Source: Vitrella brassicaformis CCMP3155
Lineage: Eukaryota > Protista > Chromerida
Reading direction: 5' to 3'
DNA: 64,000 bases
Assembly: GCA_001179505.1 (NCBI GenBank)
Contig: CDMY01000117.1
Location: 1 to 64,000 of the forward strand
The notes under the pieces were generated by a model, which worked only from the letters and a program-made list of their open reading frames with translations, made no database searches and had not been told where the DNA came from. The position numbers and the translations under genes are program-made. This document shows, piece after piece, positions 2,941 through 64,000 of this stretch; positions within the stretch are counted from its first letter, which is position 1, and every line of letters starts with the position of its first letter.

Positions 2941-3388
2941 TCATCCGAGGAAGTTGATGACGGTGAGGAAGAGCACCAGGTTGCACACGAGGTAGTCGGC
3001 GAACGCCCTCTCGGCCGTGATCTTGAACTCCTCAGGATCCATCAGCTGCACTCGCAAACCAACTGACACACACACAACAAACAAAACACACGTGTGCCTT
3101 CCGTCTGTCGTCTTGTCTTTCTTGTGTGCAGCCAACATCCCCCTGGCTGGCTGACTGACTTGTGAGCGTCATGGAGCCGACGCAGCAGATGAAGCCCGAG
3201 AGGAATGAGTTGAAGGGGAAGCTGCCGACGATGAAGCAGTACAGCAGCTGCACCACCGCCGTGTAGCCCAGGAAGATCACCAGCAGGTCCAGCAGCTTCA
3301 CACGGTCCGGCGTCACCTTCTTGTACTGCTGAAACCCGCTCTTCGCTATGTCTGTCAAAGTGCTTACGAACCCACTCAGCGCCTTCAT
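2941..3388 (-). CDS. DAD1: Oligosaccharyltransferase subunit OST2/DAD1; join(3388..3160, 3062..2941)
   Basis: The spliced product contains KLLDLLVIFLGYTAVVQLLYCFIVGSFPFNSFLSGFICCVGSMTLTIGLRVQ...AERAFADYLVCNLVLFLTVINFLG*, with the hallmark GTFPFNSFLSGF-type and ERAFAD motifs. Intron 3159..3063 is GT-AG. Confidence 0.95.
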
Positions 3389-3675
3389 GATGGGAAGAGA
3401 TCCGCTCTCCCGGCCGCTCTCGTCGCTCGAAAAAGTGCGAGCTTTTCAACGGTCCGTACACGGTGTACAGAAGCAGCGCTTTCTTTTCTGATGATTTCAA
3501 GACCACACGGCCTGCGTGCAGCACCCTACTGAATGAACGACACCATCCGGCGGCCTCTGCGCTCCTGAAAGCGGGGCTGCTCACCTCACAGAATACTGAC
3601 TGACCTGGGCTATGCACCCGCTGCAATGAAGATGTCCCCACAAGGCTGGTAGTGCGGTCTCTGCCCCTGCCGTCC

Positions 3676-6129
3676 ATGCCGCGAGAAGCGTCGGCGTCGC
3701 CCTCCCGCCCTCCGGCCGTCACTCCCTCCTGCTCAGGCCACCTTTCGTCCGGCGACATTCAGCTGGAGATCAAGACAGAAGCCGGCCAGCCGTCACCACC
3801 CGCCATGCAGGTGGGCGCTGGCTCTCCCCTTTCTACTGATGATGCCCAAAGCGGCAGCGTTACGAGAGAGGAGGTGGACCGAATGATCGGCAGGAGGCGG
3901 CCGCGGGAGGAAGAGCTCGACGCCCACTCCACACCGACAAACAGGGCCAAGAAGGCGCGGCTCGTGGCCGTCAAGCAGGAGCCGGGGGTAGGGGGGGATG
4001 GTGGGAAGGAGTATGAGCCCTATGAGGCTCCCCCCGCCCTCGCCGTGACCCCCATGGCCAAGCCCCATGACGGCGGCTCGCCCCACCACACATACCCCCT
4101 GTCAAACCAGCTGAGCTTCCCCCTGGACGAGAGGCAAGGAGGTGGGTCGGAGGGGAGCCTGACGAGCCGTGTTGATGTGGATGCTGAGGGCGACAAGGAG
4201 GTGGCGATGGGTCTTGAGGGTCAGGGAGAGGAGGAGGTGTTCGGGAAGGAGCTGGGAGAGAACGTCAACCAGACGACGTTCGGCCGCGTGCAGAGGAAGA
4301 GCCTCGAGGGGGAGCCCTTCAAGAGCGGCTTCAAAGGCGTCAGCTGGAACAGGCGCATGAACGTGAGAAACACTCATTGAGATGAGGCCACACACACGTA
4401 GTGTCTTTTGTTCCTGTGTGGGTATGTCTGATTGATCAGGCTTGGTTGGCATTCTGGAATGAGGACAAAGCTCGGCGATCCAAGTCCTTCCCAACCAAGA
4501 ACCTCGGCATCGAGGTGAGATAGGGAGGAACGGAGGGACGGAGGGACCAACACACAGAAAAGGCCTTCCTCAACACACACACACACATATTTGTGTTTGC
4601 TGTTGCTCACTCAGGGTGCGAGGCAGGCGGCCATCTCGTTCCTGACCCTCAAGCGTCACGAGGAGGACATCCGCCAGGCCACCAAGGCGTGTCTCATCAG
4701 CAGCAGCAGCAGCCACCCCCCACCCCCTCACGAGCCACACCAGGCGCCCGAGAATCTGCTGCAGCTGGCGTCCTCCATCTGGAGCATGCCCACCAGCCCC
4801 TCCATCGTCCCACCCACACCACTCGCCGTCAAGGTCAAGGAGGAGCCTGTCGAGAGAGACGAGGTGCCCGTGACCGTCAAGACAGAGAAGGGCGCCGATG
4901 TGGTCATCAAGCGGGAGGAGAAGGAGGAGGAGGAGGAGGAGGGCAGCGCAGAGGGCAGCGCAGAGGGCAGCGCGAGGCAGCCGGCTGTCATCCAGCCGTC
5001 TTTGACGATCAACGATGACGCGCTCATGGCCCCTGCTGCCGAGTCGGCCATCTGTGCAGCCGCCAGTGATGCAGCAGCCCCACCACCATCACCACCACCT
5101 CCCCCACCATTGGCAGCGGAGAAGGCCAGCGGCGGCACAATGCCGCCGCCTATTCTGTCGATCAGCGGATCTCCCGTGTCGCCCTTCACCCACCCCTCGC
5201 CCCTGCAGCCCTCCCCTGCCCCATCGTTCACGCCCACCGCCAGCATCTACCATCCCGGTACCGTCATTCTGCCTCACAGGCTGACGCTGCCGTCCTTGGC
5301 CTCGCCTGAGGTCAAGCAGGAGGACATCAGGGCTGCCGTTGACCACCATCCGCCATTGCGTCAGCTGCCGGTGCCGGGCGCCCATGCGGGTGGTCTCCTG
5401 CGCTTCCTGACGCAGCACCAACCGATCTCCAGAAGGCATGACGTGGTCCTGTCGACGCCTGCACCGCCCGTGTGCGTGTCCGTCCCCCCGCCCCCCACAC
5501 CCGTCACGACCACCAGCACCAGTCGGCTTCTCTCACAGGTGGTGCAGCAGCACATCCATCTGCAGAGGATGCAGCAGCAGCAGCAGCAGCCGAGGACGCC
5601 TTCCCCCATGCCCCCCCTCTCGTCGGCTGCATCGTCCGGCCGATCGTCAGGCCGCCCTTCGCTTCTGGGATCGCTGGGCCAGCTGCTGCGGCTGGCGAAT
5701 CAGCATAAGGACGAGGGAGGGCCGGGTGGCGGGACGCACCACCACAATGACGGAGACACGACGACCGGTGGCACCCCCGGCAATCAGTCGACGGACAACG
5801 ACGATGCCGAAGAGTTCGACCCCGACACCCTCTTCAAGGACCCCTCCCCTGCACCCGCTGCATCTGCCTCCCCTGGCCGTGACTCTATGGCCTCACTCTC
5901 GCGGCCGCTGGACGCCCTGACGCTCGATGCCACTAGGAGGAACGATCATCAGGCCGGTGGTCACAGCAGCATGTGGAGCGAGGGAGTTGGCGGTCTGCTG
6001 GGCGGTGCCGACATGCATGATGCACCCATGGATTTGGCCGATGGGAGGAGTGGCGAAGGTGCGATGGGGGCGGCGGGCGGTGGCGGTGGGGGGAGTGGGA
6101 GCGGCTGGTGCGACTCGTGGATATATTGA
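3676..6129 (+). CDS. ApiAP2-type transcription factor with a single AP2 domain; join(3676..4362, 4440..4514, 4615..6129)
   Basis: Splicing two GT-AG introns rebuilds the AP2 domain FKGVSWNRRMN|AWLAFWNEDKARRSKSFPTKNLGIE|GARQAAISFLTLKR. The rest is low-complexity P/S/Q-rich sequence. The start ATG at 3676 is inferred. Confidence 0.85.
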
Positions 6130-12049: not shown

Positions 12050-13950
12050 GGCATACGACTAGACAGCAAGTCGGGGTGGGGAGGTGGGGGGGGAGGTGGG
12101 GTGGGTGTTGGCCTATGTGTGGGGCTGACTGACCTCGAGTTTGATGTTGTATATGCTCTGATAGTACTCGCCCACCTTGCACTCTCGGCTGTTTTTGTCA
12201 CGGATTTTCGGTGGCGCGAGTGTTGAAGGGGCTTCTGCTCCTCCACCTGCAGACAGACAGATGTGGACATACAGACATTTGGGGAAACATTGCATTCCTC
12301 TGATACATGCTGGCTCCGTTGCACAGGCTCCGTTGTTCGTGTGTGTGTGTGTTGGTTCTTACGTCGTCGTAATGTGATATCGGACGTAGAGCATGGCCTC
12401 GTGTTTGAACACATTGAGCGTCTCCTTCATCTTGTAGTGGTCCAGAAAGGACGCCAGCAGGTCGCACACAAGCAAACCTGACACACACACGGAGACACAC
12501 ACACATAGGTCCTCTGTCTGTCTGTCTGTCTGTCTCTCTGTGTGTGGGGTTGCCTGTCTGACCATGTGCCGACTCTTTGAGCCGTTTGATGCCCTCATCC
12601 AGCTCCTCTGCCCGCTCGTCGTCGACAGTCGGCGGAATGCGACTCATCATCTGAAAGACTTGATACCGGCCCTCAAGTCTGGAGGAGGAGCTGACGGTGG
12701 GCCTCAGGAAGCCCTCGCTGCCCGTCACCCAACGCAGACGACGGAGACGGTCTGGAGCGACGGGCTGGGGCGCCGGGGCTAGGCCGCTGCGGACAGCCGC
12801 TCTCGCCTCCGCTCTCGCCTGACAGTGGTACGGTTCGCCCCTCACTCGCCCAGCTGCCAATGGGCTCCCCCCCACGGCAGCGGCGGCCGAAAGCTGCATG
12901 GGCGCAACAGGGGCTGCGGGGTCGTGGAGAGGGGCTGACTTGATCGGGAACTGTCGCTGCCGAATCTCACGGGCGGGGCGGGGACCTGAAGGGTGAGTGT
13001 GGGTGGTTGGTCTGCCCTCTGAGGCCTCCCACGATCCGTTCTGCAACCGCCCCTCGAGTGTGTAGTTGATGATGTCCAGCAGCAGGGGGCCGTCCGTGGG
13101 TGCCGACGAGACTGGGGGCGGGAGGGGCAGGGACCCGCACAGCTGCTCCTTGGACAGCACGATGTAGCGACGGGACACTATCTCCTCCGGCAAGCGGCCC
13201 TGATTGACCACATGGGAGGGGGGAGGTGTTCGTGTGTGTGTGTGTGTGTGTGTGTGGGTCCTTACGTCGTCGTATTGCTCGTGTTTGAAAACATTTAGCG
13301 TCTCCTTTATTCCGTAGTAGTCCAAAAGCGATGCCACTAGGTCGCACACAAGCGAACCTGACACACACAGGAAGACACACACACATAGGTCCCCTGTCTG
13401 TCTGTCTGTCTGTGGGGTTGCCTGTCTGACCATGCGGCGAGTCTTTGAGCCGCTTGATGCCCTCCACGAGCTCATCTGCCCGCTCGTCGTGGGCAGTCGG
13501 CGGCCTACCACTCATGAGCTGAAACACTTGACTCTTCAACTCCGCCTGTGCACACAGCAATCAGCCCGACACACACATACACACACAGAGCAATGAATGA
13601 ATCCCAACCCCACAAAGCAGCTCACCTTGATCCTCGGCAGGATGCCCTGCTGCACCATGGCCCCTATCACATGCTCCTTCAACACCGCCACCTTCTCCCG
13701 ACCAGCAGGCCCCCCGTAGTACCTCCCCTCTCGTGGCGCTCTTCGTCCCCCAGCACCCTGCTCTTCAGCCCGGGCTCCCGGGCGATGGTCGACGGGCGCC
13801 TGTCGCGGCCCTCGTCGCGCAGAATGCGCTCGATGCGCGCTTCCTCCTCTGGGTCTTCATGAGGTTCGCCCCGCCAAGCTGCCAGTGGCCTCCCCCCGAC
13901 GGCAGCGGCGGCCGACAACTCGGGAGACGGACTGGGCGGTGAGAGCTGGG
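12050..13950 (-). pseudogene. FOP/CEP43 (FGFR1OP)-like N-terminal domain with LisH, one full and one partial copy, frameshifted
   Basis: Spliced exons give EKVAVLKEHVIGAMVQQGILPRIK|AELKSQVFQLM...|GSLVCDLVASLLDYYGIKETLNVFKHE|...GPLLLDII. This matches the FOP pattern as recalled (GVLNRIKAELRAAVF / LVASLVAEFLQFFNLDFTLAVFQPE / GPLLLEVI). A second AELR-QVF plus LisH copy lies at about 12360-12665. Frameshifts occur at about 13725 and through an insertion in the second LisH exon at about 12370-12395. Confidence 0.75.
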
Positions 13951-36475: not shown

Positions 36476-39400
36476 ATGGAAGCGAAGGCTCCCCCAATGG
36501 ACGCGCTCGGCGTCAGCCTGAGGCCTTCGGCTATCTTTCCCGAGCGACAGGCCAGCGTCCATAGCAGCCGGATCAGCGCTTCCAGAGAGCCGACTCGGAG
36601 GGCGGCATCGGGAGCCTACAAGCTCATGACGGCCGCCGTGAGGTGAGGCAAAAGGCAGATCCATGTCGGTGTGGTCCTTGTGCGGCATTCACTGTTCTGT
36701 GTTTGTTTGTTTGTTTGTTTGTTTTGCATGCAGACGCTTCTCTGTCCTTCGGTCTTACACGCCTGCCGCCCTCAGCCCCGTCTACTCAAGAGCCAGAAGT
36801 TTTTTCTCGAGCCTTCGGCCTTCGTTCTTCTCGCCCGGCGCCACGGCTGAGAGAGAATCGGCGCGACAGACGCCCACAGACGGCACGCCTGGCCTGAGCA
36901 AGGGAGGGGTGGACCTGTTCCCGAGCTGGGAGAAGGAGAATGAGGGCGCCATTGATAGAGAGCAGGTCCAGTCCTTTCTCGCGGCAGCAAGAATTGCCCC
37001 CCTCGCGCCACCACCGCATCCACTTGGCAGGCGGCTGTTCATTCCTGGCAGTGCGAAAGCCGTGTCGCTCTCGCGCAACGGCAGATGGCTTGTCCTGGCA
37101 ATGATTGATGGCCACGTGTTCGTCTACGACGCTCTCGAGCGAGAGAAGCTATTCGAAGACAGGATCCATATCGATCAGCGGCGCAATAAGGGAGGCGGCC
37201 TTGCGATCTCGGATGACGGGAGTCGCGTGTGTGCGCTGGACGGCCAGGGGGGGCTCCACATGTGGGACGTCAAGACGAGCAAGAAGGTCGCGGGGGTGAA
37301 TGAAGGCGGTGGCTGGATGTCTCGCATTCTGTCGGACGTTCAGATGGACTCAAGAGGGAAGATCATCCTCACGGGTACATGACATTCAATAATTGCTCAT
37401 TGATCAAATGTATGTTTTGTCGGCTCCTCTTGCCCTCAGGAGGAGACGATCTGGCTGTATTTGCTTTCGCGGACGGGAACTTACTCCACCGACACGACTG
37501 CGGCTCTCCTGTGCGGTGTCTCGACCTTTGCGGGGAGAGCGAAAGAGTCATTTATCCGCGATCGGCCCTGTCTCCATCCTCGTCCACAACCCCCTCGCCA
37601 ATCTTGCAAGCGATAGCCGCGCCCAGCCCGGCGCCAAGTCCGTCGTTGTCCATCATTCGCATGGCCACGCAGGAACTCCGACGAGACCTGCGACCCGTGT
37701 CCTCGGTGCCATTCTCCGCTGTGTGTGGTGTGGATGATGGGAGCATCCGGCTTTTTGACCTGATTGACCTGAACGAGTACCGTGTCATCAGGGGGCACGC
37801 GGGGCCTATCAGGGCCATCGCGGCGTCGAAGAATGGTCGATTCATCGCCACTGTGGCGCAACGGACAGGCGTACTCAAGTAGGCTCAGGACCTTGTGTGG
37901 TCACTCCTTTTGATGTCGCCTTTTCTTTCAATTCTGTTGCAGGCTATGGCAAGGTGTGAGTGGATGTGAGGACAAGGCTTTGCAGCCCCACACAACAGAC
38001 AAGGAGCCAAACGACTCGCCAACCTTTTTCACCTCGGTGGCCATCAACGACGACGGCGAGACAGTTTATGCCGGGGACCGCACCGGTGGGGCTCACCTCT
38101 TCTCGACCGAGACAGGCAGCGAGGAAAGGGACCTCCGACTGCACGAGGGAGAGGTGAGAGCGGTTGCGATGAGTGGCGACGGCGGTATCCTTTGCACACT
38201 CGGCAGTGACGGTTGCATGTGTTCTGCTCGCATTCCGAGCGAGGAAGTGCAGCTACCTGGGCATACGAATAAAGTGCGGCACCTCGTCATAAGCGAGAAC
38301 GGCCAAGTGGTGGCATCTGTGAGTGATGACAATGACCTCAAGTGAGAGGGAGACGGGTTCTCTTCGTCAGCACACACTAGGGATGCCTATGCTTATACAC
38401 GTCAGGGTGTGGTGCGTCAATCCCTTAACGTCATCCGGCGGATCTGCTCACCCGCTGACGGCGCTGGACAATGCCGATGACGCCGTCGAGAGCTGGTGCC
38501 AGTTTCCGACTTCAATCACAGCCCTTGCAATGAGCGTAAAGGGGGACTTCCTCGCCCTTGGTGACACTGATGGCTACGTTTGTCTTCATTCGACGGCATC
38601 CCTTATGGCTGCTACCCAGAGCTCGCCCACGAGCAACAGCTGCAGCCCAACAGCCGACCGCATGACCTTCTCAGTCCACTCATCTTCGCCACACCAAGAC
38701 GACTCACCCCCAAGCCTCAACAGCAACTTTGCAGCCCGCACACCCCCAAGCGAGCAGCCTTCGGTGCCGCCGATGCCATCGCCTGGCAGCGAGATTTCGG
38801 GGGGGATGCGGAAGAGCCTGCGGTTCACCGTCACTTCCCCAGACGAGACCGACGGGGACAAAGACAAGAACAAAGAGACAGCACCGGCGCCAAGTCGTGG
38901 CAAAGGTGACGACGCACCGGCTTTAAGGCGAGCGCCGTCGTTGCGGTTGCCGCTTGGAGGCCGAGATGGGAAGAGAGAGAGCGAAGTGGATGCAGCAAAG
39001 CCGCCCCAGCCATTGGTCAAGTGGGAGGCACACGATGACTGTATTAGTGCTCTCGCCATGCAGGTACGCGTATTCACGCCAAGAGGGCGGTGAGGGAGGG
39101 CCATCGTCCCATTGCGTGTGTTGAATGCGCTGGTAGACGAACAAGCGGATCGTGAGCGGTTCGCCGGATGACACCTCCGCTGTGTTTGTGTGGGACGGCC
39201 TGAGTGGCGAGGTGGTGGCACGCTGCGAGGGCGAGATGGGCCAGGTCAACGGTGTGGCTATCAACATGGAGGCGATGATTGTCTTAGCCGTTGGCGACCA
39301 AGGAGACCTCAGAATCTGGGCAGCGGAGACCGGCGAGCCTTTGTGTGTGATCCTCTCTGCACATGTCGGTGAGGCCAATTGCCTGTGTCTTTCCCGCGAC

Positions 39401-42400
39401 GCCCTCACCGTCGCAACAGGAGGGGACGATGCCCTCATCCGTCTGTGGAGGGTCGAGCATCAGCCACAAACACCCAAGGGTGCCAAGTCACCGAGACACC
39501 ACGAACATCCCCCTTCTATCGACCTGACGACACGCGAGAGGCGGTCCTCGATCATGCTTCCGCCAGTCGGAGGAGGGGGACGGCGTCGATCGTCCGTCGC
39601 CGTCCCTCCCCCCGTCCAGCGGCCGCATCGACTATCCAAGACCCGCAGCCCAAAAAGCGGGGGTCAGAGGAGCCCTAAGTCGGCAAGCAGGCGGATGCAG
39701 CAGGCGTCCACTCACACTCTGTTCACGCCGACATCCAAGGGGGACAGGCGGCCGTCCCTTGGGTCCAGGGGCTCGAAAGACCGGCGCCAGTCGATTGGAG
39801 TGGCAATGCGTGAGAGACGGCACACACGAGGACGACCTGTCGTGGCTGATGTGTCCTTACCTTTTGACGTGTCTGCAGTGGCTGGAACGGTCATTGATAA
39901 GCCTCGGCCCTTCCGTGTGCTCCGCGGGCACGTTGGTCCTATCGCCTGCATCTCCTGCGACGACACATGCCACCTGCTGGCGTCGGTGGCCCACGAGGAC
40001 GACGGCATGGTATTCATGATGCGAATTCCATCCCATCGCCTCCGAGTCTCCTATTTCTTTTGTGTCGTGTCTTATGGACAAGGTCTTCCTGTGGGAGTCT
40101 ACACAAGAGACACCCATACAGGTCGTTGATAGGCACTACCAGTCAAGCACGCTGCAAGTGGCCCTGACCAGTGGGCGTCTCGTGGCGACTGCCGACAGAC
40201 GAGGCCGCCTGCTCCTGTGGAGGGTCAGCTCCAGACATTGTTCATTGATTTGCACTGGTGGACTCACTGATTTGCCTGTGCAGGTGAATGACAGCCTTCT
40301 GTTCCACTGGCAGACCATCATCATCAGATTAGAACAGCTCTGGTCCAAGGCCATACAGACGAGATATGACGTGCAGTTTCACATGGACTCCCACCTGAAC
40401 TTGCGTGCCGTTGAGGGCATTCGCAGTGCGGAGGCGATGCTGGCATTGGAACGAGATAACATCATCTCGATGCTCCGCGCGAACAAGTCCCTGGCCTGTC
40501 AACGCCTGTGGCCCGTCAACCACTCCCTGGTCACTTACCTCGTCCAGATGGGCAATCTCCCGGGCCTACAACTGTTGTTCGAAGCCGTTGGAGCGACACC
40601 GACTGGCTTTCTGCCGACGGTCATGAAAGAGACGGCCTTGGACATCGCTTTGAGGCTCCGACAGTACGAGGCGCTTGACGTGATGCTCAACGCTGCCAGG
40701 CAGTGGCGCACCAATACCATGAGTGAACGTGTCTCCGCCGCGATTGGTACGATCGATGCGCAAGGTCTGCTCACCCTTCTCTTCTTTCTATGATGCAGTG
40801 CGTCTGCTGCCCGTGGAGCTGAAGCATCTGCCTGCATTTCTCGATTCTCGTCTGCGGTCGCCGTCTCGGGTTGCTGGCGAGAATCCGCCTCAGGTGACAG
40901 ACAGAGTGTAATATGCAAAGGAGACATGCAAGCGGAATTTCTTTCAATTGTTCTTGACGCCTCAGGTGACAGTGCTCCCCGGCAGCGCCCTGAAGAGCAT
41001 CCACGCACACCACCGGGCCAGCAAGTCGCTGCGTGTCGATGGGGCTGACGCCCCAGGCATGACGCCTGAGGAGTACTCAGCTCATCTCGCTCCGCAGTTC
41101 AGTGATGTGGACCGCAGGCGGCCGCCAAGGCAGCCTCTCCACAAGGAGCCCTCCACGTTTCCTCCGAGCCAGAGTCGCTTTTTGGGCCGCATCAGTCTTG
41201 TGATGGCGCAACGTGCGGCTGAAGATGAGGAGGAAGAGGACGACTCTCCGTCCCACAGGGGAAGCTGGAGGGCCAAAGCCGACACGGGATATCAACACAT
41301 TGACATAAGACATTTCGGTGAGAGATACATGCGAACCGTCGTCGATAGGTGCGCCAGTGATGGGTGTCGTTTCGCTGGATTACTGCAGATCTTCCAAACA
41401 TCATGAACCCAACGGTGAGCGGTGGCTTCCTGCGGCATCTGAACCAAGCTAGTACACAGGACCTCTTCCGCACCCTCACTGTACGCGCCATCCTCTCATT
41501 CAAGTGGCAGGTGCGCTTCCCTCGCTTCTGCACAGATCGTCCGCGCAAAACCTACGTGTCTCCGCGTGCTGAACTGCAGAAATACGGCGGCCCTATGTAT
41601 CGCCGGCGGCTGCTGCTGCAGCTGCTCTTTTTGTTGGTGTTCTTCATCCACTCATGCGTCATCGTCAAATATATGGGAGACGACTGGCGAGAGACAGTCA
41701 GGGTATGACGGCAAAGCACAGCGCAGCACAGCCACATTGTATCTCGTCTGTTTGCTCTGTGTGTCGCACATTAGAGTTGGAATCCGATGTGGGGGTGGAT
41801 CACCGCCGCCGCGCGACTGCTGCTCATCATTTTGTCGCTCTTCCTCGGACTCAAGATACTTTTGCTCGTCAGAAAACGGGTGAGTGAGCGAGAGCCATAA
41901 AGTGATGACAACATGACGACATTCGTATCGTTTCCTGTGTTGGGCCGACAGCACTTTAGGGCGTTCTTTTCCGTGTGGACTTGGTTGGACATATCTGCCT
42001 GTGTCTTTGTCATGGCCTTCATTATATGTGAATACCTCGATTGCGACAGGAGGTGGGCGATGTAGTTAATGGCACATCATTCGGTCCGTCTCTCATTTCC
42101 CTCGTGGCTCTGCAGCGTCGAAGCCATGCTGTCGTCTATCACGGCGGTGCTCCTGTGGTCGAAGATGATATATTTTTGCAGGGGATTTGAGGGCACTGGT
42201 CACCAGATCAGAATGATACAGGTAACTGAATCATGGTATAGGGCTGACGGACAGGACAGTCAAGTGCATGGATGTGTCACGTGTCGTGCAGGAAGTCGTT
42301 TACGACATGAGACATTTCATAGCAGTGATGCTTATCATGATTGTGGGCTTTGGTCACGCTTTTCATGTTCTTTATTTACACCCAGGTGCCGCTTACAAGA

Positions 42401-56276: not shown

Positions 56277-58087
56277 TCAGACGTTCATGGCTGGCCCCCC
56301 CCTGTGCCTCAATCTGCCATCTGCCAGCATGGGTGGCGCCAGCAGCAGCACACTCACCACCGCCATGACGCACAGCACACCGAAGAGGCTGTCCCACCCC
56401 AGCGCCTCCGAGATGCTGGCCGTCAGGTACCCCTGCACCACCGCACCGCTCGACCCCATCCCGTTGACCACCCCGGCCGCAGTCGACAGAGCCCCCAGGC
56501 CCAGCCCCGATTTCTCGCAGAGGTCCTGCGCGGCTGCTGCACCCAACACAGAGTCGGGGCCGGCCACCGTGAAGCCCACCACTAGCATCGCGAAACATAT
56601 GGCGCTAAAACCTGATGGATGGATGGATGGAGCAGAACTACAGTGTTTCCCCCCAGTGTTTCGTTTGCTGGCTGTCGTGTCCGTTCCGTTATGTTCTGTG
56701 CGTTGGGTACCGATGTGTGTGGAGTATGCGAAGAAGAGGATGGCTGTTGCCGTGGCGAGGCACATGGTGGCGGCCGCCTGCAGCCTCTTCCCCTGCATTA
56801 TGTGGTCCGACAGGTAGCCGGTGAATATGGCCCCGCCGATGCCCCCGATGTCAAACATCATGGAGGAATAGCCCGCGATGGAGGCCTCGTACTCGAGGTG
56901 TTGTGTGAGGAAGTAGGGCAGCCAGAAGAGCAGCGTGTAGCGGATCAGCTTGACGAAGAAGTAGGCCCCCGCTACGTGCAGCAGGTAGGGCATCCTCACA
57001 ATGTCCCAGAACGTGAAGGTCCGCCGCACGGGCGCCCCAGTCGTCACCACATGAGTGCCGCCATTGGCTCCTTCCCCTGACCCCGATGTCGACTTGGCGT
57101 CGGTGGGTGCGGACCCCGGCCCCTCGCCGGTCCCCGCTGCGCCGCCCCCGCCCGGGCTGCCGCCTCCCACCACTTTGGGCGACTCGGTCCTCTCTTCCCC
57201 TGCTGTCTTGACATTGACACCATTTCCCTCTCCGTTGCCCTTGCCCGCCGCGGCATCCATCTTGGCCTTGGGCCCTCGGTGCCCCACTGACGATGCCACA
57301 ACGTGGTCGTCACTCGCTTCGCTCCCGCCAGATGTGGACGCCATCGATGAGACCGTCATGCGTCGGGGACTGGTGCGGCTGTCGCCATTGGCCGTGTCAT
57401 CGGCGGCCTTCGGCGAGCCTTTGTCGTTGGCAGACGGCGCCGGGGCCACCTTTTCGGCTCCCGTGGCGATGACGGCTGCGAGGGCGGGGGAGGGGGCTTC
57501 AAGTAGGAGGGAGTAGAGGGCGAAGCCACATGCCGCCACCACTAACGCGGGCATGTAGAAGGCCATGCGCCACCCAAAGTGCTGCGCCACGAAGGCAGCG
57601 AGGGCCGTGGCCACCATCGCACCGATCTGCTGACTGGCAGGTACGCAAAAACACCAACAAACGCGCGCAGAGGGGAGGGAGGGAGGGAGGAATGAATACA
57701 ATGCGGCTCGGCCCGCACACACGTGTTGTCAACCCCGTTCAGCTCACCTGGTTGTCCACACTCCCAGGACAGAGCCCCTCGTCGTGGGGCTGTACCAGGG
57801 CGACAGCGCCTTGACGAACAGGGGGAATGCAGCCGCATGGAGCAGCCCGTTTCCCAGCCAGGCGTACGCCAAGACCTTCTCGTTGTGCGTCCCGGCAAAG
57901 ATGAAGCAGCACACCGCCGACCCCGCGTAGGCCAGGAACAGGACGTTCCTGAGGCCCCACCTGTCGGCCAGCGACGGGATGAACATCTGGCCCAATGCAT
58001 AGGCCGTCAGGAAGGCCGTGTCGATGGTCCCCAGCTGAAACCGACTCACGCCAAGCTCATTCTGACACCAGACCCCCCATCACACAT

Positions 58088-58118
<31 letters not shown>

Positions 58119-58533
58119 AAATGAGGGCCATAGACAATATGCGCGTCTATTTATCTGTCCATCGCTCTCTGCGCACCTGTATGTGTGTCTTGACGACTGA
58201 GAAGGGTTTCCTGGTGCTGTAGAGCACTGCATAGGAGGTGTAGGTCAGCGTGAAGAGCAGCAGCTGGCTGTGCCGGACGATGGCCCGGGGGTCAAAGGCC
58301 TTGACCGCTGCTGGCTGCTGTGGCTGCGGCTGACTGTTGCTGGTGGCCTCCTTTGCGGCACCCTCCTTGCCGCCCTCCATATCGTCACCGCCGTCAGTGG
58401 TCGGGAGGGCGGCAAATCCCCGCGGCGCCCGCTGCAGCACCAGGGAGAGGGGGTTCTGGGCCATCTCTTGCAGCCAGTTGAGGGAGGACTGGAGGGCAGA
58501 CGGCGGTTTGGTCATCTTTGGCGACTTCACCAT
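56277..58533 (-). CDS. MFS organophosphate:Pi antiporter family (SLC37/GlpT-like sugar-phosphate exchanger)
   Basis: TYTSYAVLYSTRKPFSVVK, LGTIDTAFLTAYALGQ, RGSVLGVWTT|SQQIG, FFVKLIRYTLLFWLP, FDIGGIGGAIFTGYLSD, GPDSVLG and AAGVVNGMGSSG are OPA-family motifs. There is a long central cytoplasmic loop. Confidence 0.9.
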
Positions 58534-58730
58534 TCAACCGAGAGACCACATTTAAGTTGCTAAGACTGGGAACCGAGCACGCAGAGGCACTCAATGCCCC
58601 TCTCTGCACAGAACAAACAACGCAGAGAAGCCAAAACCTCGTCGCACATTGGGTTTTGACTTGGTCCAGCAACTTCAAGCTCGCAATCGCCAGCGGCCTT
58701 CTTCCCCTCCCTTTCCGTCAAACACGTCGA

Positions 58731-60006
58731 ATGATGGAGCATGCTGAGGGTGAGCTCGACAACAATGCACTTACTGCCGAGGCAAGGAAGCTGCTCGAGG
58801 AACTGGCATCAACGACGCTCCCCGACGGCCGCCCCGGCAACGTGGGCATCTCGTGGGACAAGAGCCGCAACAAGATGGGCTACTGCGTGCGGCTCAAGTT
58901 CCTGCAGCAGAACATCATGGGCAAGGGCTGCCACAGACCCGCTGAGAGGTCCGTCGCTGGGCTAAGGCTGGCGCTCCAGAGTGCAAAGGATGTGCGCGAC
59001 AAGCTGGTGAGTGACTTGAGCGGTGCCCGGGCCGAGCTGAACGAGATGAACGCCATGCACCAGCAGATGCTTCTGGACCAAGTCAAGGAACGACCAGGTG
59101 AGGAGGAAGTCAAAACAGGGGGAGGGGACAAAACGACGTGCATTCAGCATCTACGGCTCTGTTTCTACCTTGTGTGTGCGGTTGCTGGCAGATGCCTTGA
59201 CGGATGCCCAAGTCCGCACAGCCGCCCAGCTTCTGATGAACCGACACCGCGCCAACACGCCTGCCACTCGTCCTGCCCTCAACAGTCGCGAGGACGGCGA
59301 GCGGCGGCTCAAGCAGGGCTGCGGAATCGCATGGCGCAACGACAAGCTGGCCTTCGAAGTGAAAATCTGGCGCGACGGCGGCTACCTCCCCAGGCGAGCC
59401 TTTGCGGTCAAGCGCAACACCGTCGCGGACCTAAGGGAGGCCTTTGCCATGGCCAAGGCGGCGGCTGAGCACATGATGGAGGAGCACATGGAGAGGGAGG
59501 TCGTCGTGCAGCCCACCCTCCTGCAGGCGGCCATGGGGCAGCAGCAGCAGGCTGTGCCAGCGATCGTGGACCACCCCCCACTTGCCATCACCGATGCCCA
59601 GCCCTCGCCCGCCGCCATCAAGGCCGTCAAGGACGAGAAGATTGACGGCTCATCTGACCCACAGGACGGCAGCGTGGCCCTCGACAAGTGCGCAGAGGCG
59701 GCGCGGAAGCGCCTGAGCGATCGGAGCGTGGGTGACTTCATGGTGGCGGAGCAATTGCGGTGGAACTGTGACTCTCGTGAGTACGAGGTGGTAGAGTGTG
59801 TGTACCGCAGGCACAACTGGCGTTCGACGCCCTTCTCCGCCAAGTGGGCCAGTGTGGGTGCGAGGGTGCCGGAGGGGGAGGGGGGGCTGATGCTGATGGA
59901 GGGAGTGGTGGATGAGGCCCTGAACAAGGCTGCCAAGGCCGTGCTGCTGAGAGCGCTGAGGCGGAGGAATAAAGACAGGGCCAAGCGGAAGGACAAGGCA
60001 GTGTAG
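58731..60006 (+). CDS. ApiAP2-like protein with two clear and one possible degenerate AP2 domains; join(58731..59097, 59192..60006)
   Basis: VGISWDKSRNKMGYCVRL...LRLALQSAKDVRD and CGIAWRNDKLAFEVKIWRDG...RRAFAVKRNTVADLREAFAMA fit the three-strand-plus-helix AP2 layout. A third candidate is QLRWNCDSREYEVV...PFSAKW...VVDEALNKAAKAVL. Confidence 0.65.
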
Positions 60007-60107: not shown

Positions 60108-60407
60108 NNNNNNNNNNNNNNNNNNNNNNNNNNNNNNNNNNNNNNNNNNNNNNNNNNNNNNNNNNNNNNNNNNNNNNNNNNNNNNNNNNNNNNNNNNNNN
60201 NNNNNNNNNNNNNNNNNNNNNNNNNNNNNNNNNNNNNNNNNNNNNNNNNNNNNNNNNNNNNNNNNNNNNNNNNNNNNNNNNNNNNNNNNNNNNNNNNNNN
60301 NNNNNNNNNNNNNNNNNNNNNNNNNNNNNNNNNNNNNNNNNNNNNNNNNNNNNNNNNNNNNNNNNNNNNNNNNNNNNNNNNNNNNNNNNNNNNNNNNNNN
60401 NNNNNNN
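60108..60407. other. Assembly gap of 300 N, preceded by a 26-nt G homopolymer (60082-60107)
   Basis: Read directly from the sequence. Confidence 0.98.
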
Positions 60408-60677: not shown

Positions 60678-63600
60678 TCAGCCGCGGTGGACTTCCTTCA
60701 GTCTTGAGCTGACGGTTGACCTCAGGAAGCCCTCGCTGCCCGTCACCTCGCGGACACGACGAGGACGCGCTGGAGCGACGGGCTGGGGCGCCTGGGGTCT
60801 GCCGCTGCGGACAGGCGCTCTCCTGTCCGCTCTCGCCTCACAGTGACGCGGTTCGCCCCTCACCCGCCCAGCTGCCAATGGGCTCCCCCCCACGGCAGCG
60901 GCGGGCGACAGCTGCATGGGCAACAGGGGCTGCTGGTGGGTCAAGGAGAGGCGCTGACTTGATTGGGGACTGTTGCTGCCGAATGCCACGGCGGGGCGGG
61001 GACCTGAAGGCTGAGTGTGGGTTGGTGGTCTGCCCTCTGAGGCCTCGGGCGGCTCCTCCACCTGCAGACAGACAGATGTGGACACACAGACATGGGGGGG
61101 AAACATTACATACCTCTGATACATACCCGTCCCGTTCTTCTCTACCTGTTGTGGTGGTGGTGCCTGTGTTTGCTGCCTCTGCCTCTGCCGTCGTTGGTCT
61201 CGCTTTCTGATGATGTCTTGGCGGTCGATGGTGTCGAGCTGTGTCTGGAGGATCTCGCGGCGGGGCTCGTCGGGCAGATCCGTCAGCGACTGGAAGTCCA
61301 CACCGGCGCACGACAGAAGAAACCTCTCCGATACCTCCGGCGATCGAGCAATGGCGCTGAGCAGGTCAGAATAGAAGGGCAGGGGCTCGTCCAGGTGGGC
61401 ATCCTCCTCACCCTCTCCCCCAGCCGGACTCTCCTCGGCAGCTTCCTGACTCTCGGCGGGGCGCTGTGACTGCTCGTCTCCCTGCTGTGGTGCTTCTTGT
61501 GGCGGCTGGTCGCGCTGCTCTGACGCCGGTGGCGGCGGCTGAGATGCAGGCGCTGCTGGTGCTGGTACTGGTGCTGGTCGTGGGTGCGGTGCCGTCACGT
61601 CGGGTGGCCCAAAGGTGGAGGCACCGCAGGAGCGTCCTGTTGGGCCTGGGCTTCGCCCGTTGACCTCCCTGTCTGGCCGTCAGCAGTGGGGTTGTGCTGT
61701 CGCACCCGGGCCAACGCCTGTTGGACAAAGTTGAGGTCCAGCCGCACGTGCGGGGAAGGGGCTGACTGCACCGAAGGGGCTGCCAACTGCACCAAAGGGG
61801 CTGCCGACTGCACCGCCGGGGCGGGCGGGGGAGGGGCTGCCGACTGCATCGACCGTGTGAGAGAACATACGAGGCCGTCGATGGACATGCTCATCTCAGG
61901 CTGCTCAGCACCAGCACCGGCACCACCAGCAGCAGCAGCTGCCGCTGCAGCGGGAGCTTGGGGTTGCTTCGATGCGGCAGCAGTGGGCTGCGGCTGAGCA
62001 CCAGGGTGCTCCTGTTGTTGCTGCTCTTGCGGGAGTTCCGGTGGCTCGCCGACCTCTGCCCGCTCGTTGTCGACTGTCGGCGGAATGCGACCCATCATCT
62101 GAAAGACTTGAAACCGCAGCTCCGCCTGTGCACACAGCAATCAGCCCGACACACACATACACACACAGAGCAGTGAATGAATTCCAACCCCACAAAGCAG
62201 CTCACCTTGATCCTCGGCAGGATGCCCCGCTGCATGGCCCGTATCACGTGCTCCTTCAACACCGCCACCTTCTCCCGACCAGCAGGCCCCCCGTAGTACC
62301 TCAGCGCCCTCTCGTGGCGCTCTTCGTCACCCATCACCCTGCTCTTCAGCCCGTGCTCCCGGGCGATGGTCGACGAGCGCCTGTCGCAGCCCTCGTCGCG
62401 CAGAAAACGCTCGATGCGCGCCTCCTCCTCAGCTGACCCGTCCGCGCCATCGTCATCGCCCTCCTGGCCGCCGCTGTCGTCATCCTCCCTGTCCATGCCT
62501 GAGGATGGCCCGGCGGCACCCTCAGGCTGCGTGAGGCTCAGAATCACGTCCATGTCCAAAGGCGGCAGACGAGTGTGACGCGGGTGGGGGAAATCTGATC
62601 CACACACACACACACACACACAATCGAGATGGCTGCGTGGCCATGCGTGTGGCTCGTTGCGTACCATTGACATCTCTGGCTCCCATAGATCCCACTACAG
62701 TGCTCTCCTCAATGCCCTGCCCGCCCCCAGCCGCAGCCGCTGGAGCGATCTCGCGCATGTTGCCCGCGATGGTGTCGTTAAACGACGCACTCAGCTCCAG
62801 CTCCAGGCTATCGCCCACATGATCCGCGCAAGCCAGCTCGCTCAGCCGTATGTCCCTCTTCGGCAGCGAGTTCGATGGCGGCACTGGTGAGAGAACGGGC
62901 CGGTTGTCGTCCGAGTGCTGCAGTGGGGAGGGCAGCTGCGAATTGGTCATGGCCGCTGGCTGGCCCAAAGGTGGAGGCACCGCAGGAGCGTCCTGTTGGG
63001 CCTGGGCTTCGCCCGTTGACCTCCCTGTCTGGCCGTCAGCAGTGGGGTTGTGCTGTCGCACCCGGGCCAACGCCTGTTGGACAAAGTTGAGGTCCAGCCG
63101 CACGTGCGGGGAAGGGGCTGACTGCACCGAAGGGGCTGCCAACTGCACCAAAGGGGCTGCCGACTGCACCGCCGGGGCGGGCGGGGGAGGGGCTGCCGAC
63201 TGCATCGACCGTGTGGGAGAACATACGAGGCCGTCGATGGACATGCTCATCTCAGGCTGCTCAGCACCAGCACCGGCACCACCAGCAGCAGCAGCTGCCG
63301 CTGCAGCGGGAGCTTGGGGTTGCTTCGATGCGGCAGCAGTGGGCTGCGGCTGAGCACCAGGGTGCTCCTGTTGTTGCTGCTCTTGCGGGAGTTCCGGTGG
63401 CTCGCCGACCTCTGCCCGCTCGTTGTCGACTGTCGGCGGAATGCGACTCATCATCTGAAAGACTTGAAACCGCAGCTCCGCCTGTGCACACAGCAATCAG
63501 CCCGACACACACATACACACACAGAGCAGTGAATGAATCCCAACCCCACAAAGCAGCTCACCTTGATCCTCGGCAGGATGCCCCGCTGCACCATCGCCCC

Positions 63601-64000
63601 TATCAGATTCTCCTTTAACAGGGCCACCTTCTCCCGACCAGCGACGGCCGCTTGAGGGTCAGGCTCCTCCATATCCCACATTTCCCAACACAACTCGGTA
63701 ACCAGGTACTGACACACATGTCAAATGGATTCATGCATTGGTGTCAGTCAGAGAGTGAGAGTGAAGTGACTGACTTACATTCCATATTTCGTTGGCAACG
63801 GCATCTTTCAGTGCGGTGGCCTCGATGTCGCGATACTCGTACCACACGTCCTTGTCTGACACACGGAAGGAGGATACACCAACAGAGAGACAGAGACAGC
63901 GGAGCCATGGTGTGTGTGTTGTGGATTGGATGGGTGCATGGTCGATATGACTGACTTACAGTCGCTGGTCTGATCCTCTCTGAACGGCCGCATCTCCAGG
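60678..64000 (-). CDS. Chimeric gene beginning beyond the window: DUF4378-like helix, two FOP N-terminal fragments without LisH, and an out-of-frame UBM plus Pro-rich tail (partly pseudogenised)
   Basis: Exons >64000..63960, 63855..63779 and 63708..63562 splice in phase to LEMRPFREDQTSDYKDVWYEYRDIEATALKDAVANEIWNYLVTELCWEMWDMEEP...EKVALLKENLIGAMVQRGILPRIK|AELRFQVF. The second unit stops at 61595. The UBM-containing ORF 60678..61598 is in another frame. Confidence 0.6.
61605..63642. repeat. Recent direct duplication of about 680 bp (61605..62283 and 62961..63642)
   Basis: The copies are near-identical from tggcccaaaggtggaggcacc to tctcccgaccagc, including the intron. Their translations (ORFs 61595..62140 and 62522..63496) differ at only a few residues. 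Confidence 0.95.

What the first reader, a model, noticed from the sequence alone, without database searches (positions are those of the whole stretch)
63562..64000. DUF4378-like (CEP350/TRM C-terminal) helix fused in the same exon to the FOP/CEP43 N-terminus, a possible Rosetta-stone fusion of known binding partners
Seen: three in-phase exons give DYKDVWYEYRDIEATALKDAVANEIWNYLVTELCWEM, and exon 63708..63562 continues without a stop into EKVALLKENLIGAMVQRGILPRIK|AELRFQVF. Established: the CEP350 C-terminal region (recalled as WVNYDEDELCVKMQLADGIFETLIKD) binds FOP, and the plant TRM M2 motif binds the FOP homologue TON1. Inference: both halves of this interaction are encoded in cis. This copy lacks the LisH dimerisation exon, so it could act as a self-capped or dominant-negative regulator of the centrosomal FOP complex.
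Basis: partly seen in the sequence, partly recalled or inferred. Interest (0 to 1): 0.75.

Follow-up and report, generated by a model that had tools for sequence, protein, structure and literature searches.

The report
LisH-less FOP-family paralogue with fused helix
The exons and the FOP-type "TOF" motif are real, but this is the edge of a rearranged, duplicated copy of a centrosomal FOP-family gene, and the claim that its front helix is the CEP350/TRM partner motif is not statistically supported.

Summary
On the minus strand, three canonical GT..AG exons (63999-63960, 63855-63779, 63708-63562) read in phase as the quoted peptide. Exon 3 runs without a stop into a TOF motif that the next intron splits (PRIK|AELR).

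A TOF profile built only from real FOP/CEP20/OFD1/TON1 proteins scores the spliced peptide at 21.8 bits (E=1e-5 for the window; 0 of 20000 shuffles reach it).

- The locus (64000-60678) is a LisH-less paralogue of a canonical TOF-LisH-PLL gene at 13.7-12.2 kb in the same window.
- It carries the TOF motif twice, through a 685-bp repeat with a 1356-bp period.
- Homology of the first copy to its paralogues starts abruptly at 63642, inside exon 3. The "fusion" is therefore a duplication breakpoint.

The window helix, however, gives no DUF4378 hit, an hhalign probability of 0.3%, and 7.4 bits (E=0.35) against a 167-sequence CEP350 C-terminal profile. It is the best hit in the window but not significant.

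Sequence upstream of 64000 could not be obtained. In-frame ATGs at 63681 and 63672 allow a rival model without the helix. The Rosetta-stone reading is possible but unsupported (about 0.1).

The parts
63960..63999 (-). Exon 1 fragment, cut by the window edge: LEMRPFREDQTSD plus the first base of a Tyr codon. It contains an ATG at 63993-63991.
63856..63959 (-). Intron 1 (104 nt), GTAAGTCAGTC...GTGTGTCAG.
63779..63855 (-). Exon 2: (Y)KDVWYEYRDIEATALKDAVANEIWN, the main part of the amphipathic helix.
   Evidence: Coding-like GC3 periodicity. No other copy in the window.
63709..63778 (-). Intron 2 (70 nt), with the same 11-nt donor as intron 1. If retained, the frame stops after 16 more codons.
63643..63708 (-). 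Exon 3, 5' part, unique sequence: YLVTELCWEMWDMEEPDPQAAV (helix end plus a Pro-containing linker). In-frame ATGs at 63681-63679 and 63672-63670.
   Evidence: 63% mismatches to the paralogues, so unrelated.
63562..63642 (-). Exon 3, 3' part: AGREKVALLKENLIGAMVQRGILPRIK, the TOF-motif head of copy A. Homology to copy B and to locus 1 begins exactly at 63642.
63482..63561 (-). Intron 3 (80 nt), which splits the TOF motif at PRIK|AELR. Only 1-2 differences among all three paralogous copies.
62665..63481 (-). Exon 4: TOF tail AELRFQVFQMM, then a Q/A/P-rich low-complexity region where the canonical paralogue has LisH, then unique sequence.
62958..63642 (-). Direct repeat, copy A (685 bp).
61602..62283 (-). 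Direct repeat, copy B. The last 633 bp are 99.4% identical to copy A, intron included. The first 49 bp are 84% identical with a 3-nt indel.
62206..62594 (-). Exon 5: acidic N-terminal-type region (EEEARIERFLRDEG...) plus the TOF head of copy B (REKVAVLKEHVIRAMQRGILPRIK). Joined in frame to exon 4 by a 70-nt intron (62664-62595).
   Evidence: 90% identical to 13475-13849.
61595..62125 (-). Exon 6: TOF tail of copy B plus low complexity, ending at TGA 61597-61595.
60678..61598 (-). C-terminal ORF in a different frame, with no ATG. Exons 61598-61146 and 61061-60678; the second is 87% identical to 12688-13028 of locus 1.
12198..13706 (-). Paralogous locus 1. TOF head 13706-13626, tail exon 13545-13431, LisH exon 13357-13266, PLL exon from 13199, then a second TOF tail (12668-12605) and a second LisH exon (12477-12363).
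   Evidence: Pfam FOP_dimer 29.0 bits, E=1.3e-6.

Best explanation
The finding is the window-truncated 5' end of a minus-strand, multi-exon gene (beyond 64000 down to 60678). This gene is a rearranged, LisH-less paralogue of a canonical FOP-family (TOF-LisH-PLL) gene lying 50 kb away in the same window.

Shown:
- The locus carries two TOF motifs because of a 685-bp internal repeat. Each motif is split by the same phase-0 intron, and each is followed by a Q/A/P-rich low-complexity stretch where the canonical copy has its LisH and PLL exons.
- The first TOF copy shares homology with its paralogues only from 63642 onward, 8 codons before the motif.
- Upstream of that point, the same exon and two more exons encode in frame an unrelated amphipathic helix. 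The 'fusion' is thus the breakpoint of a segmental duplication or non-allelic recombination inside an exon.

Inferred:
- If spliced as read, the product is helix, a linker of about 14 residues with two prolines, then TOF, then disordered region, then a second TOF, and probably the C-terminal tail it shares with the canonical paralogue.
- Without LisH and PLL it cannot build the FOP-type dimer module alone.
- It therefore most likely either acts through its TOF helices and shared tail at the same microtubule-organising structures as its full-length paralogue (co-assembly or competition), or is a young chimeric duplicate on its way to decay.
- The helix's likeness to the CEP350/TRM M2 helix is at noise level and should not be treated as a partner motif.
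For: - Exon structure and a 666-codon spliced ORF.
- TOF motif: copy A 21.8 bits, copy B 19.3-20.1 bits, against 4.4 bits for the next window segment. 0 of 20000 shuffles reach the real score.
- Repeat anatomy.
- Sharp homology breakpoint at 63642, with 63% mismatch upstream.
- Canonical paralogue with LisH and PLL, and a Pfam FOP_dimer hit. No LisH or FOP_dimer in locus 2.
- Mosaic similarity typical of gene conversion. The intron is 97.5-98.8% identical in all three copies, while the next exon is 28% diverged from locus 1. The copy A head carries 7-8 private changes.
- Signs of low constraint or decay: a stop and frame change at 61597, a 4-nt frameshift upstream of the locus-1 TOF head, and a stretch of the shared C-terminal exon read in different frames in the two loci.
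- Helix exons look coding.
- M2 tests are negative or non-significant.
Against: - There are no transcript data, so the splice pattern and start codon are unverified.
- The gene's true 5' end lies beyond 64000 and no public copy was found.
- The helix is nevertheless the single best match in the whole window to the CEP350 C-terminal profile, and splicing exon 2 to exon 3 raises that score from 3.4 to 7.4 bits. A true but very divergent M2 therefore cannot be excluded.
- The locus-2 TOF motifs are closer to the eukaryote-wide consensus than the canonical paralogue's (21.8 and 20.1 against 14.4 bits). That argues for retained constraint rather than decay.
Confidence: 0.5

Rival explanations
1. 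The helix is a true M2-type (DUF4378 C-terminal, CEP350/TRM) recruiting helix, and the gene is a Rosetta-stone fusion of M2 with the TOF motif of its binding partner. It would give a self-capped or dominant-negative regulator of the FOP complex.
For: - The helix is the top hit of the window to a 167-sequence CEP350 C-terminal profile (7.4 bits, per-sequence P about 2e-4).
- It matches W, Y, E, K, A, I, an aromatic residue, L, V/L and E at conserved positions.
- Only 0.2% of shuffles reach the score.
- The CEP350 tail is the end of DUF4378 and is sufficient to bind the FOP N-terminal region (PMC5469608). TRM M2 binds TON1 (PMC6300067).
- A linker of about 14 residues would allow a helix hairpin (inference).
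Against:
- The alignment needs a one-residue insertion and misses the invariant D and T.
- No DUF4378 hit, even with an 8x concatemer that recovers DUF4378 for the real CEP350 tail.
- hhalign gives 0.3% probability.
- In real members the helix ends the protein; here at least 600 codons follow.
- Binding has been shown for FOP(1-179), which includes LisH, not for TOF alone.
- The junction is a duplication breakpoint, with no sign of conservation elsewhere.
Confidence: 0.12
2. Gene-model artefact. The helix exons belong to a separate upstream gene or to a 5' UTR, and the TOF protein starts at the in-frame ATG at 63672 (or 63681) as MEEPDPQAAVAGREKVALLKEN... No helix-TOF fusion protein exists.
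For: - Two in-frame ATGs lie inside exon 3, just after the helix.
- A start at 63672 would put TOF about 16 residues from the N-terminus, as in FOP, CEP20, OFD1 and TON1.
- If intron 2 is retained, the upstream frame stops after 16 codons, giving a helix-terminal upstream protein.
- Open frames of 13-25 codons are not rare at 58% GC.
Against: - Both upstream introns have strong, identical donors and CAG acceptors.
- Phases are compatible across all three exons.
- The helix exons have coding-like periodicity in exactly the frame that continues into TOF.
Confidence: 0.22
3. Assembly artefact. Near-identical repeats or haplotypes were mis-joined, creating the tandem TOF copies and the helix|TOF junction.
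For: - A 300-N gap flanked by a poly-C run lies at 60108-60407, next to the gene.
- 633 bp are 99.4% identical at 1.36-kb spacing.
- Both loci contain frame breaks.
Against: - The 49 bp immediately after the junction carry 7-8 substitutions private to copy A relative to both other copies. Copy A is therefore a distinct sequence, not a mis-placed read set.
- All four junction types (X|R, R|U, U|R, R|Y) would need spurious support.
Confidence: 0.08

Closest known systems
FOP family (FGFR1OP/CEP43, FOPNL/CEP20/FOR20, OFD1, plant TONNEAU1): proteins with an N-terminal TOF-LisH(-PLL) module
   Same: The TOF motif is clearly present, twice (GILPRIKAELRFQVF; 21.8 and 20.1 bits). A full TOF-LisH-PLL paralogue lies in the same window, and part of the C-terminal tail is shared with it.
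   Different: There is no LisH and no PLL/FOP_dimer region; low-complexity sequence stands in their place. The family is defined by coupled TOF-LisH motifs (PMC6070722). TOF is duplicated in tandem within one ORF, and the first TOF is preceded by a foreign helix.
M2 motif, the C-terminal helix of DUF4378 in CEP350/CAP350 and plant TRM proteins, which recruits FOP/TON1
   Same: An amphipathic helix with W-x2-Y-x3-E ... K-x2-[VL]-A-[DN]-x-I-[FW]-x2-L-[LV]-x-E spacing, similar to the CEP350 consensus. It is the best match in the window.
   Different: The match is not significant (E=0.35). It needs a one-residue insertion, misses the invariant D and T, and lacks the acidic QELxEEE lead-in. No DUF4378 body is detectable in the 13 residues available upstream. 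The helix is not at the protein's C-terminus.
Trypanosomatid RP2, a lineage-specific fusion of TOF-LisH to a TBCC domain (PMC6070722)
   Same: It is a precedent that the FOP-family targeting module gets fused to other modules in protists.
   Different: There the complete TOF-LisH pair is kept and sits N-terminally. Here only TOF is kept.

Membership tests
FOP family (TOF-LisH-PLL) | TOF motif (L[KR]xxLxxxLxxxG[VI]Lxx[IL][KR]Ax[LI]RxxVF) | tested here: met
   Profile from 54 distinct database TOF segments, with no window sequence included. Copy A 21.8 bits (E=1e-5), copy B 19.3-20.1 bits, next window segment 4.4 bits. 0 of 20000 shuffles reach the real score.
FOP family (TOF-LisH-PLL) | LisH motif coupled downstream of TOF | tested here: not met
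   No LisH, LisH_2 or FOP_dimer in any product of 64000-60678. The LisH-PLL profile hits only 12.4 and 13.3 kb. The feature is met by the paralogue at 13.7-12.2 kb (FOP_dimer 29.0 bits).
FOP family (TOF-LisH-PLL) | PLL / FOP_dimer C-terminal part (GPLLLxxI) | tested here: not met
   Absent from locus 2. Present in locus 1 as GPLLLDIINYTL.
FOP family (TOF-LisH-PLL) | TOF within about 20 residues of the N-terminus | tested here: inconclusive
   In the spliced model TOF starts at least 65 residues in, and the gene is cut by the window edge. It would be met only if translation starts at ATG 63672.
DUF4378 / M2 (CEP350, TRM) | Pfam DUF4378 (PF14309) match | tested here: not met
   No hit at E<=10 for the spliced peptides or for an 8x concatemer of the helix. 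The same trick recovers DUF4378 positions 129-165 for the CEP350 tail. Caveat: only 13 residues upstream of the helix lie inside the window.
DUF4378 / M2 (CEP350, TRM) | Sequence match to the M2 helix itself | tested here: inconclusive
   167-sequence CEP350 C-terminal profile: 7.4 bits, E=0.35, top hit of the window. 38 of 20000 shuffles reach it. The vertebrate-only profile gives nothing. hhalign gives 0.3%. Plant TRM sequences could not be obtained.
DUF4378 / M2 (CEP350, TRM) | Helix lies at the extreme C-terminus of the protein | tested here: not met
   In 150 representatives the motif ends within about 0-20 residues of the stop wherever the protein is complete. Here the ORF continues for more than 600 codons, unless intron 2 is retained.
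DUF4378 / M2 (CEP350, TRM) | Upstream gene body of TRM type (DUF3741/VARLMGL, M3-M4) or CEP350 type (CAP-Gly) | not testable with these tools
   It would lie beyond 64000. No public copy of the locus was found.
DUF4378 / M2 (CEP350, TRM) | Binds the N-terminal domain of a FOP/TON1 protein | not testable with these tools
   Needs an experiment.

The most novel reading that the evidence does not exclude
A natural single-chain fusion of a very divergent M2-type recruiting helix (the CEP350/TRM tail) to LisH-less TOF helices of the FOP family, in a GC-rich protist. It would act as a self-capped decoy that titrates either the CEP350-like recruiter or the full-length FOP paralogue at the microtubule-organising centre. 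It would also point to the TOF helix as the direct M2 contact.
Probability: 0.1. Interest if true: 0.6.

Novelty: new variant of a known kind. Interest (0 to 1): 0.3.

Why it matters
The FOP family is defined by a coupled TOF-LisH module that targets proteins to centrioles and other microtubule-organising centres. A copy that keeps TOF (twice), drops LisH/PLL and gains a foreign helix is an unusual natural dissection of that module.

If expressed, it could show what TOF does on its own. If the helix really were an M2, it would map the CEP350/TRM-FOP/TON1 contact onto TOF.

As the evidence stands, it is mainly an example of exon-level chimerism produced by segmental duplication and gene conversion in a local gene family. 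It also shows that a remembered motif likeness can be the best hit in a window and still not be significant.

Tried and rejected
- Word-indexed search of the 128-aa spliced peptide against 5.8 billion proteins: 5 candidates, none scored.
- PDB sequence search of the peptide: only noise. There is no solved structure of the TOF motif or the CEP350 tail.
- Pfam on all spliced products: nothing relevant. Pfam has no model of the TOF motif itself; FOP_dimer starts at residue 54 of FOP.
- Six-frame TOF search without splicing: the motif is split by the intron and scores only about 4 bits.
- A chimeric query meant to fetch plant TRMs through the VARLMGL motif returned only CEP350 tails, so no plant M2 profile could be built.
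- The 8x concatemer trick to get past HMMER's filters produces many spurious families, also for a shuffled control and including an irrelevant toxin-domain name. These were disregarded.
- Metagenome scan for relatives: 600 pattern matches, none confirmed.
- Rfam on the whole window: nothing. The conserved intron has no stable fold (z=+1.39).
- The Drevensek 2012 and Yan 2006 papers are not held.
- AP2 domains suspected in neighbouring ORFs were not confirmed by Pfam, so the 'alveolate' origin remains unverified.
Full report
**1. What is in the sequence**

The window is eukaryotic DNA of about 58-60% GC. The feature lies on the minus strand. Reading down from 64000, I find:
- An exon fragment 63999-63960 (LEMRPFREDQTSD plus one base).
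- A 104-nt intron (GTAAGTCAGTC...CAG).
- Exon 2, 63855-63779.
- A 70-nt intron with the same 11-nt donor.
- Exon 3, 63708-63562.
- An 80-nt intron.
- Exon 4, starting at 63481.

The helix-coding 183 nt have GC1/2/3 = 0.59/0.34/0.72. That is like bona fide coding ORFs of the window and unlike the flanking introns (0.52 and 0.44 GC). The exons are therefore probably coding in that frame.

**2. The FOP half is real**

Pfam has no model for the TOF motif: FOP_dimer covers residues 54-134 of human FOP. I therefore fetched real family members. An alignment-based search returned 1107 proteins, and the listed ones carry source names CEP43/FGFR1OP, CEP20/FOPNL, OFD1 and TONNEAU1. From these I built a 35-column TOF profile that contains no window sequence.

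Unspliced six-frame segments score only about 4 bits because the intron cuts the motif. The spliced peptide scores 21.8 bits (E=1e-5 for 1644 window segments), and no shuffle out of 20000 reaches it. RIKAELR..VF is identical to human FOP.

**3.

*a. The motif occurs twice.* A 685-bp direct repeat (63642-62958 and 62283-61602, period 1356-1359 bp) repeats four elements: the TOF head, the intron, the TOF tail and a Q/A/P-rich low-complexity stretch. The last 633 bp are 99.4% identical, intron included. The first 49 bp are only 84% identical, with a 3-nt indel.

*b. One long ORF.* With five canonical introns, exons 1-6 form a single 666-codon ORF that contains both TOF motifs and stops at 61597-61595. 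A further ORF without an ATG follows in another frame (61598-61146 and 61061-60678).

*c. A canonical paralogue lies in the same window.* At 13706-12198, on the same strand, sits a gene that reads after splicing as TOF (LKEHVIGAMVQQGILPRIKAELKSQVF), linker, LisH (SLVCDLVASLLDYYGIKETLNVFKHE) and PLL (GPLLLDIINYTL). It hits Pfam FOP_dimer at 29.0 bits, E=1.3e-6. Locus 2 (64000-60678) has no LisH or FOP_dimer by Pfam or by my LisH-PLL profile.

*d. The junction is a breakpoint.* A three-way alignment shows that copy B is collinear with locus 1 for 140 bp upstream of the motif (8 differences in 142). Copy A becomes homologous only at 63642 (GCTGGTCGGGAG). Upstream of that point it is 63% mismatched, so it is unrelated. 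The helix|TOF junction is therefore a duplication or recombination breakpoint inside exon 3, 8 codons before the motif.

*e. The family is a mosaic.* The 80-nt intron differs at 1-2 positions among all three copies, whereas the next exon differs at 23-24 of 82 positions from locus 1. The locus-2 tails are instead 94-95% identical to a second, partial TOF tail at 12668-12605. This pattern fits repeated gene conversion. The intron has no Rfam match and no stable fold.

**4. The CEP350/DUF4378 half**

A search retrieved 24 ORF fragments carrying ...QELHEEEAQWVNYDEDELCVKMQLADGIFETLIKDTIDVLNQISEKQGRMLLV*. An exhaustive profile search then found 372 representatives at E<=0.001. Many are proteins of about 3000 aa with the motif at the very C-terminus. 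One of these is named centrosome-associated protein 350.

Pfam places CAP_GLY and DUF4378 on these proteins, with the tail aligned to DUF4378 positions 129-165 of 166. So CEP350 tail = end of DUF4378 = M2 is sound. The literature shows that CEP350(3071-3117) binds FGFR1OP(1-179) (PMC5469608) and that TRM M2 binds TON1 (PMC6300067).

The window helix does not pass as a member:
- No DUF4378 hit at E<=10.
- Nothing with a vertebrate profile.
- hhalign probability 0.3%, in another register.
- With a diversified 167-sequence profile, 7.4 bits and E=0.35. The alignment is WYEYRDIEaTALKDAVANEIWNYLVTE against WvnYdeDe.ltVKmqladsIfdsLlkd. It needs an insertion and misses the invariant D and T.
- 38 of 20000 shuffles do as well.

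The helix is the best hit in the window, and splicing improves it from 3.4 to 7.4 bits. I therefore call this test inconclusive rather than negative. Two structural expectations of M2 fail or cannot be checked. First, M2 ends the protein in real members, whereas here more than 600 codons follow. Second, the DUF4378 body would lie beyond 64000, where I could get no sequence.

**5. How it most likely works**

*Shown:* a chimeric ORF made of helix, linker, TOF, disordered region, TOF, disordered region, probably followed by a tail shared with the canonical paralogue.

*Inferred:*
- Without LisH/PLL the product cannot form the FOP-type dimer module by itself.
- Any activity would come from the TOF helices and the shared tail. 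Examples are co-assembly with, or competition against, the full-length paralogue at the organism's microtubule-organising structures.
- Signs of low constraint make a young or decaying duplicate equally plausible. These are the stop and frame change at 61597, a 4-nt frameshift before the locus-1 TOF head, and a stretch of the shared C-terminal exon read in different frames in the two loci.
- Against decay, the locus-2 TOF motifs match the eukaryote-wide consensus better than the canonical copy does.

**6. Rivals**

- The Rosetta-stone reading stays possible at about 0.12.
- A gene-model rival is stronger, at about 0.22. In-frame ATGs at 63681 and 63672 would give MEEPDPQAAVAGREK..., with TOF about 16 residues from the N-terminus, the normal family layout. 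The helix would then be left in a UTR or in another gene.
- An assembly artefact (about 0.08) is disfavoured by the private substitutions of copy A directly at the junction.

**7. Verdict**

The thing itself is a LisH-less, internally duplicated, chimeric paralogue of a FOP-family gene, which makes it a new variant of a known kind. Interest is modest (0.3). It would rise to about 0.6 only if the helix proved to be a functional M2.

Noticed in passing
window 12198-13920 (minus strand): Canonical FOP-family paralogue (TOF-LisH-PLL) that is itself rearranged. After a C-terminal exon like that of locus 2, the ORF runs on into a second partial TOF tail (12668-12605) and a second LisH exon (12477-12363). 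A 4-nt deletion relative to copy B breaks the frame just upstream of its TOF head. A remnant of the C-terminal exon lies upstream at 13870-13920.
   Followed up: partly
window 63482-63561, 62126-62205, 13546-13625: The 80-nt intron that splits the TOF motif is 97.5-98.8% identical in all three paralogous copies, while the exon after it is 28% diverged between loci. This was taken as a gene-conversion tract. There is no Rfam hit and no stable fold.
   Followed up: yes
window about 60915-60985 versus about 12900-12970: The shared C-terminal exon is read in different frames over about 70 nt in the two loci (FGSNSPQSSQRLSLTHQQPLLP versus IRQRQFPIKSAPLHDPAAPVAP), and both frames stay open. This suggests weak protein-level constraint, or sequencing indels.
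   Followed up: no
window 61595-61600: The 666-codon ORF ends at TGA. The following long ORF (61598-60678) has no ATG and is in another frame. The link is therefore an unrecognised intron, an assembly indel or a real truncation.
   Followed up: partly
window 61236-61304 (minus strand): GVDFQSLTDLPDEPRREILQTQL resembles, from memory, the HUWE1-type ubiquitin-binding UBM repeat. Pfam gave no hit, so this is unverified.
   Followed up: partly
window 60108-60407: A 300-N scaffold gap directly flanked by a run of about 27 C, 270 bp downstream of the gene's stop. It marks this neighbourhood as hard to assemble.
   Followed up: no
window 58482-60003 (+) and 3604-4377 (+): ORFs with AP2-like strings (GISWDKSRNKMGYCVRLKF, GIAWRNDKLAFEVKIW, KGVSWNRRMN) hint at an alveolate origin. 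Pfam did not confirm AP2 at E<=0.01, so the organism remains unidentified.
   Followed up: partly
window 56280-58533 (minus) and 36642-40790 (+): Neighbouring genes: an MFS_1 transporter (62.5 bits) in several exons, and a WD40 beta-propeller protein.
   Followed up: partly
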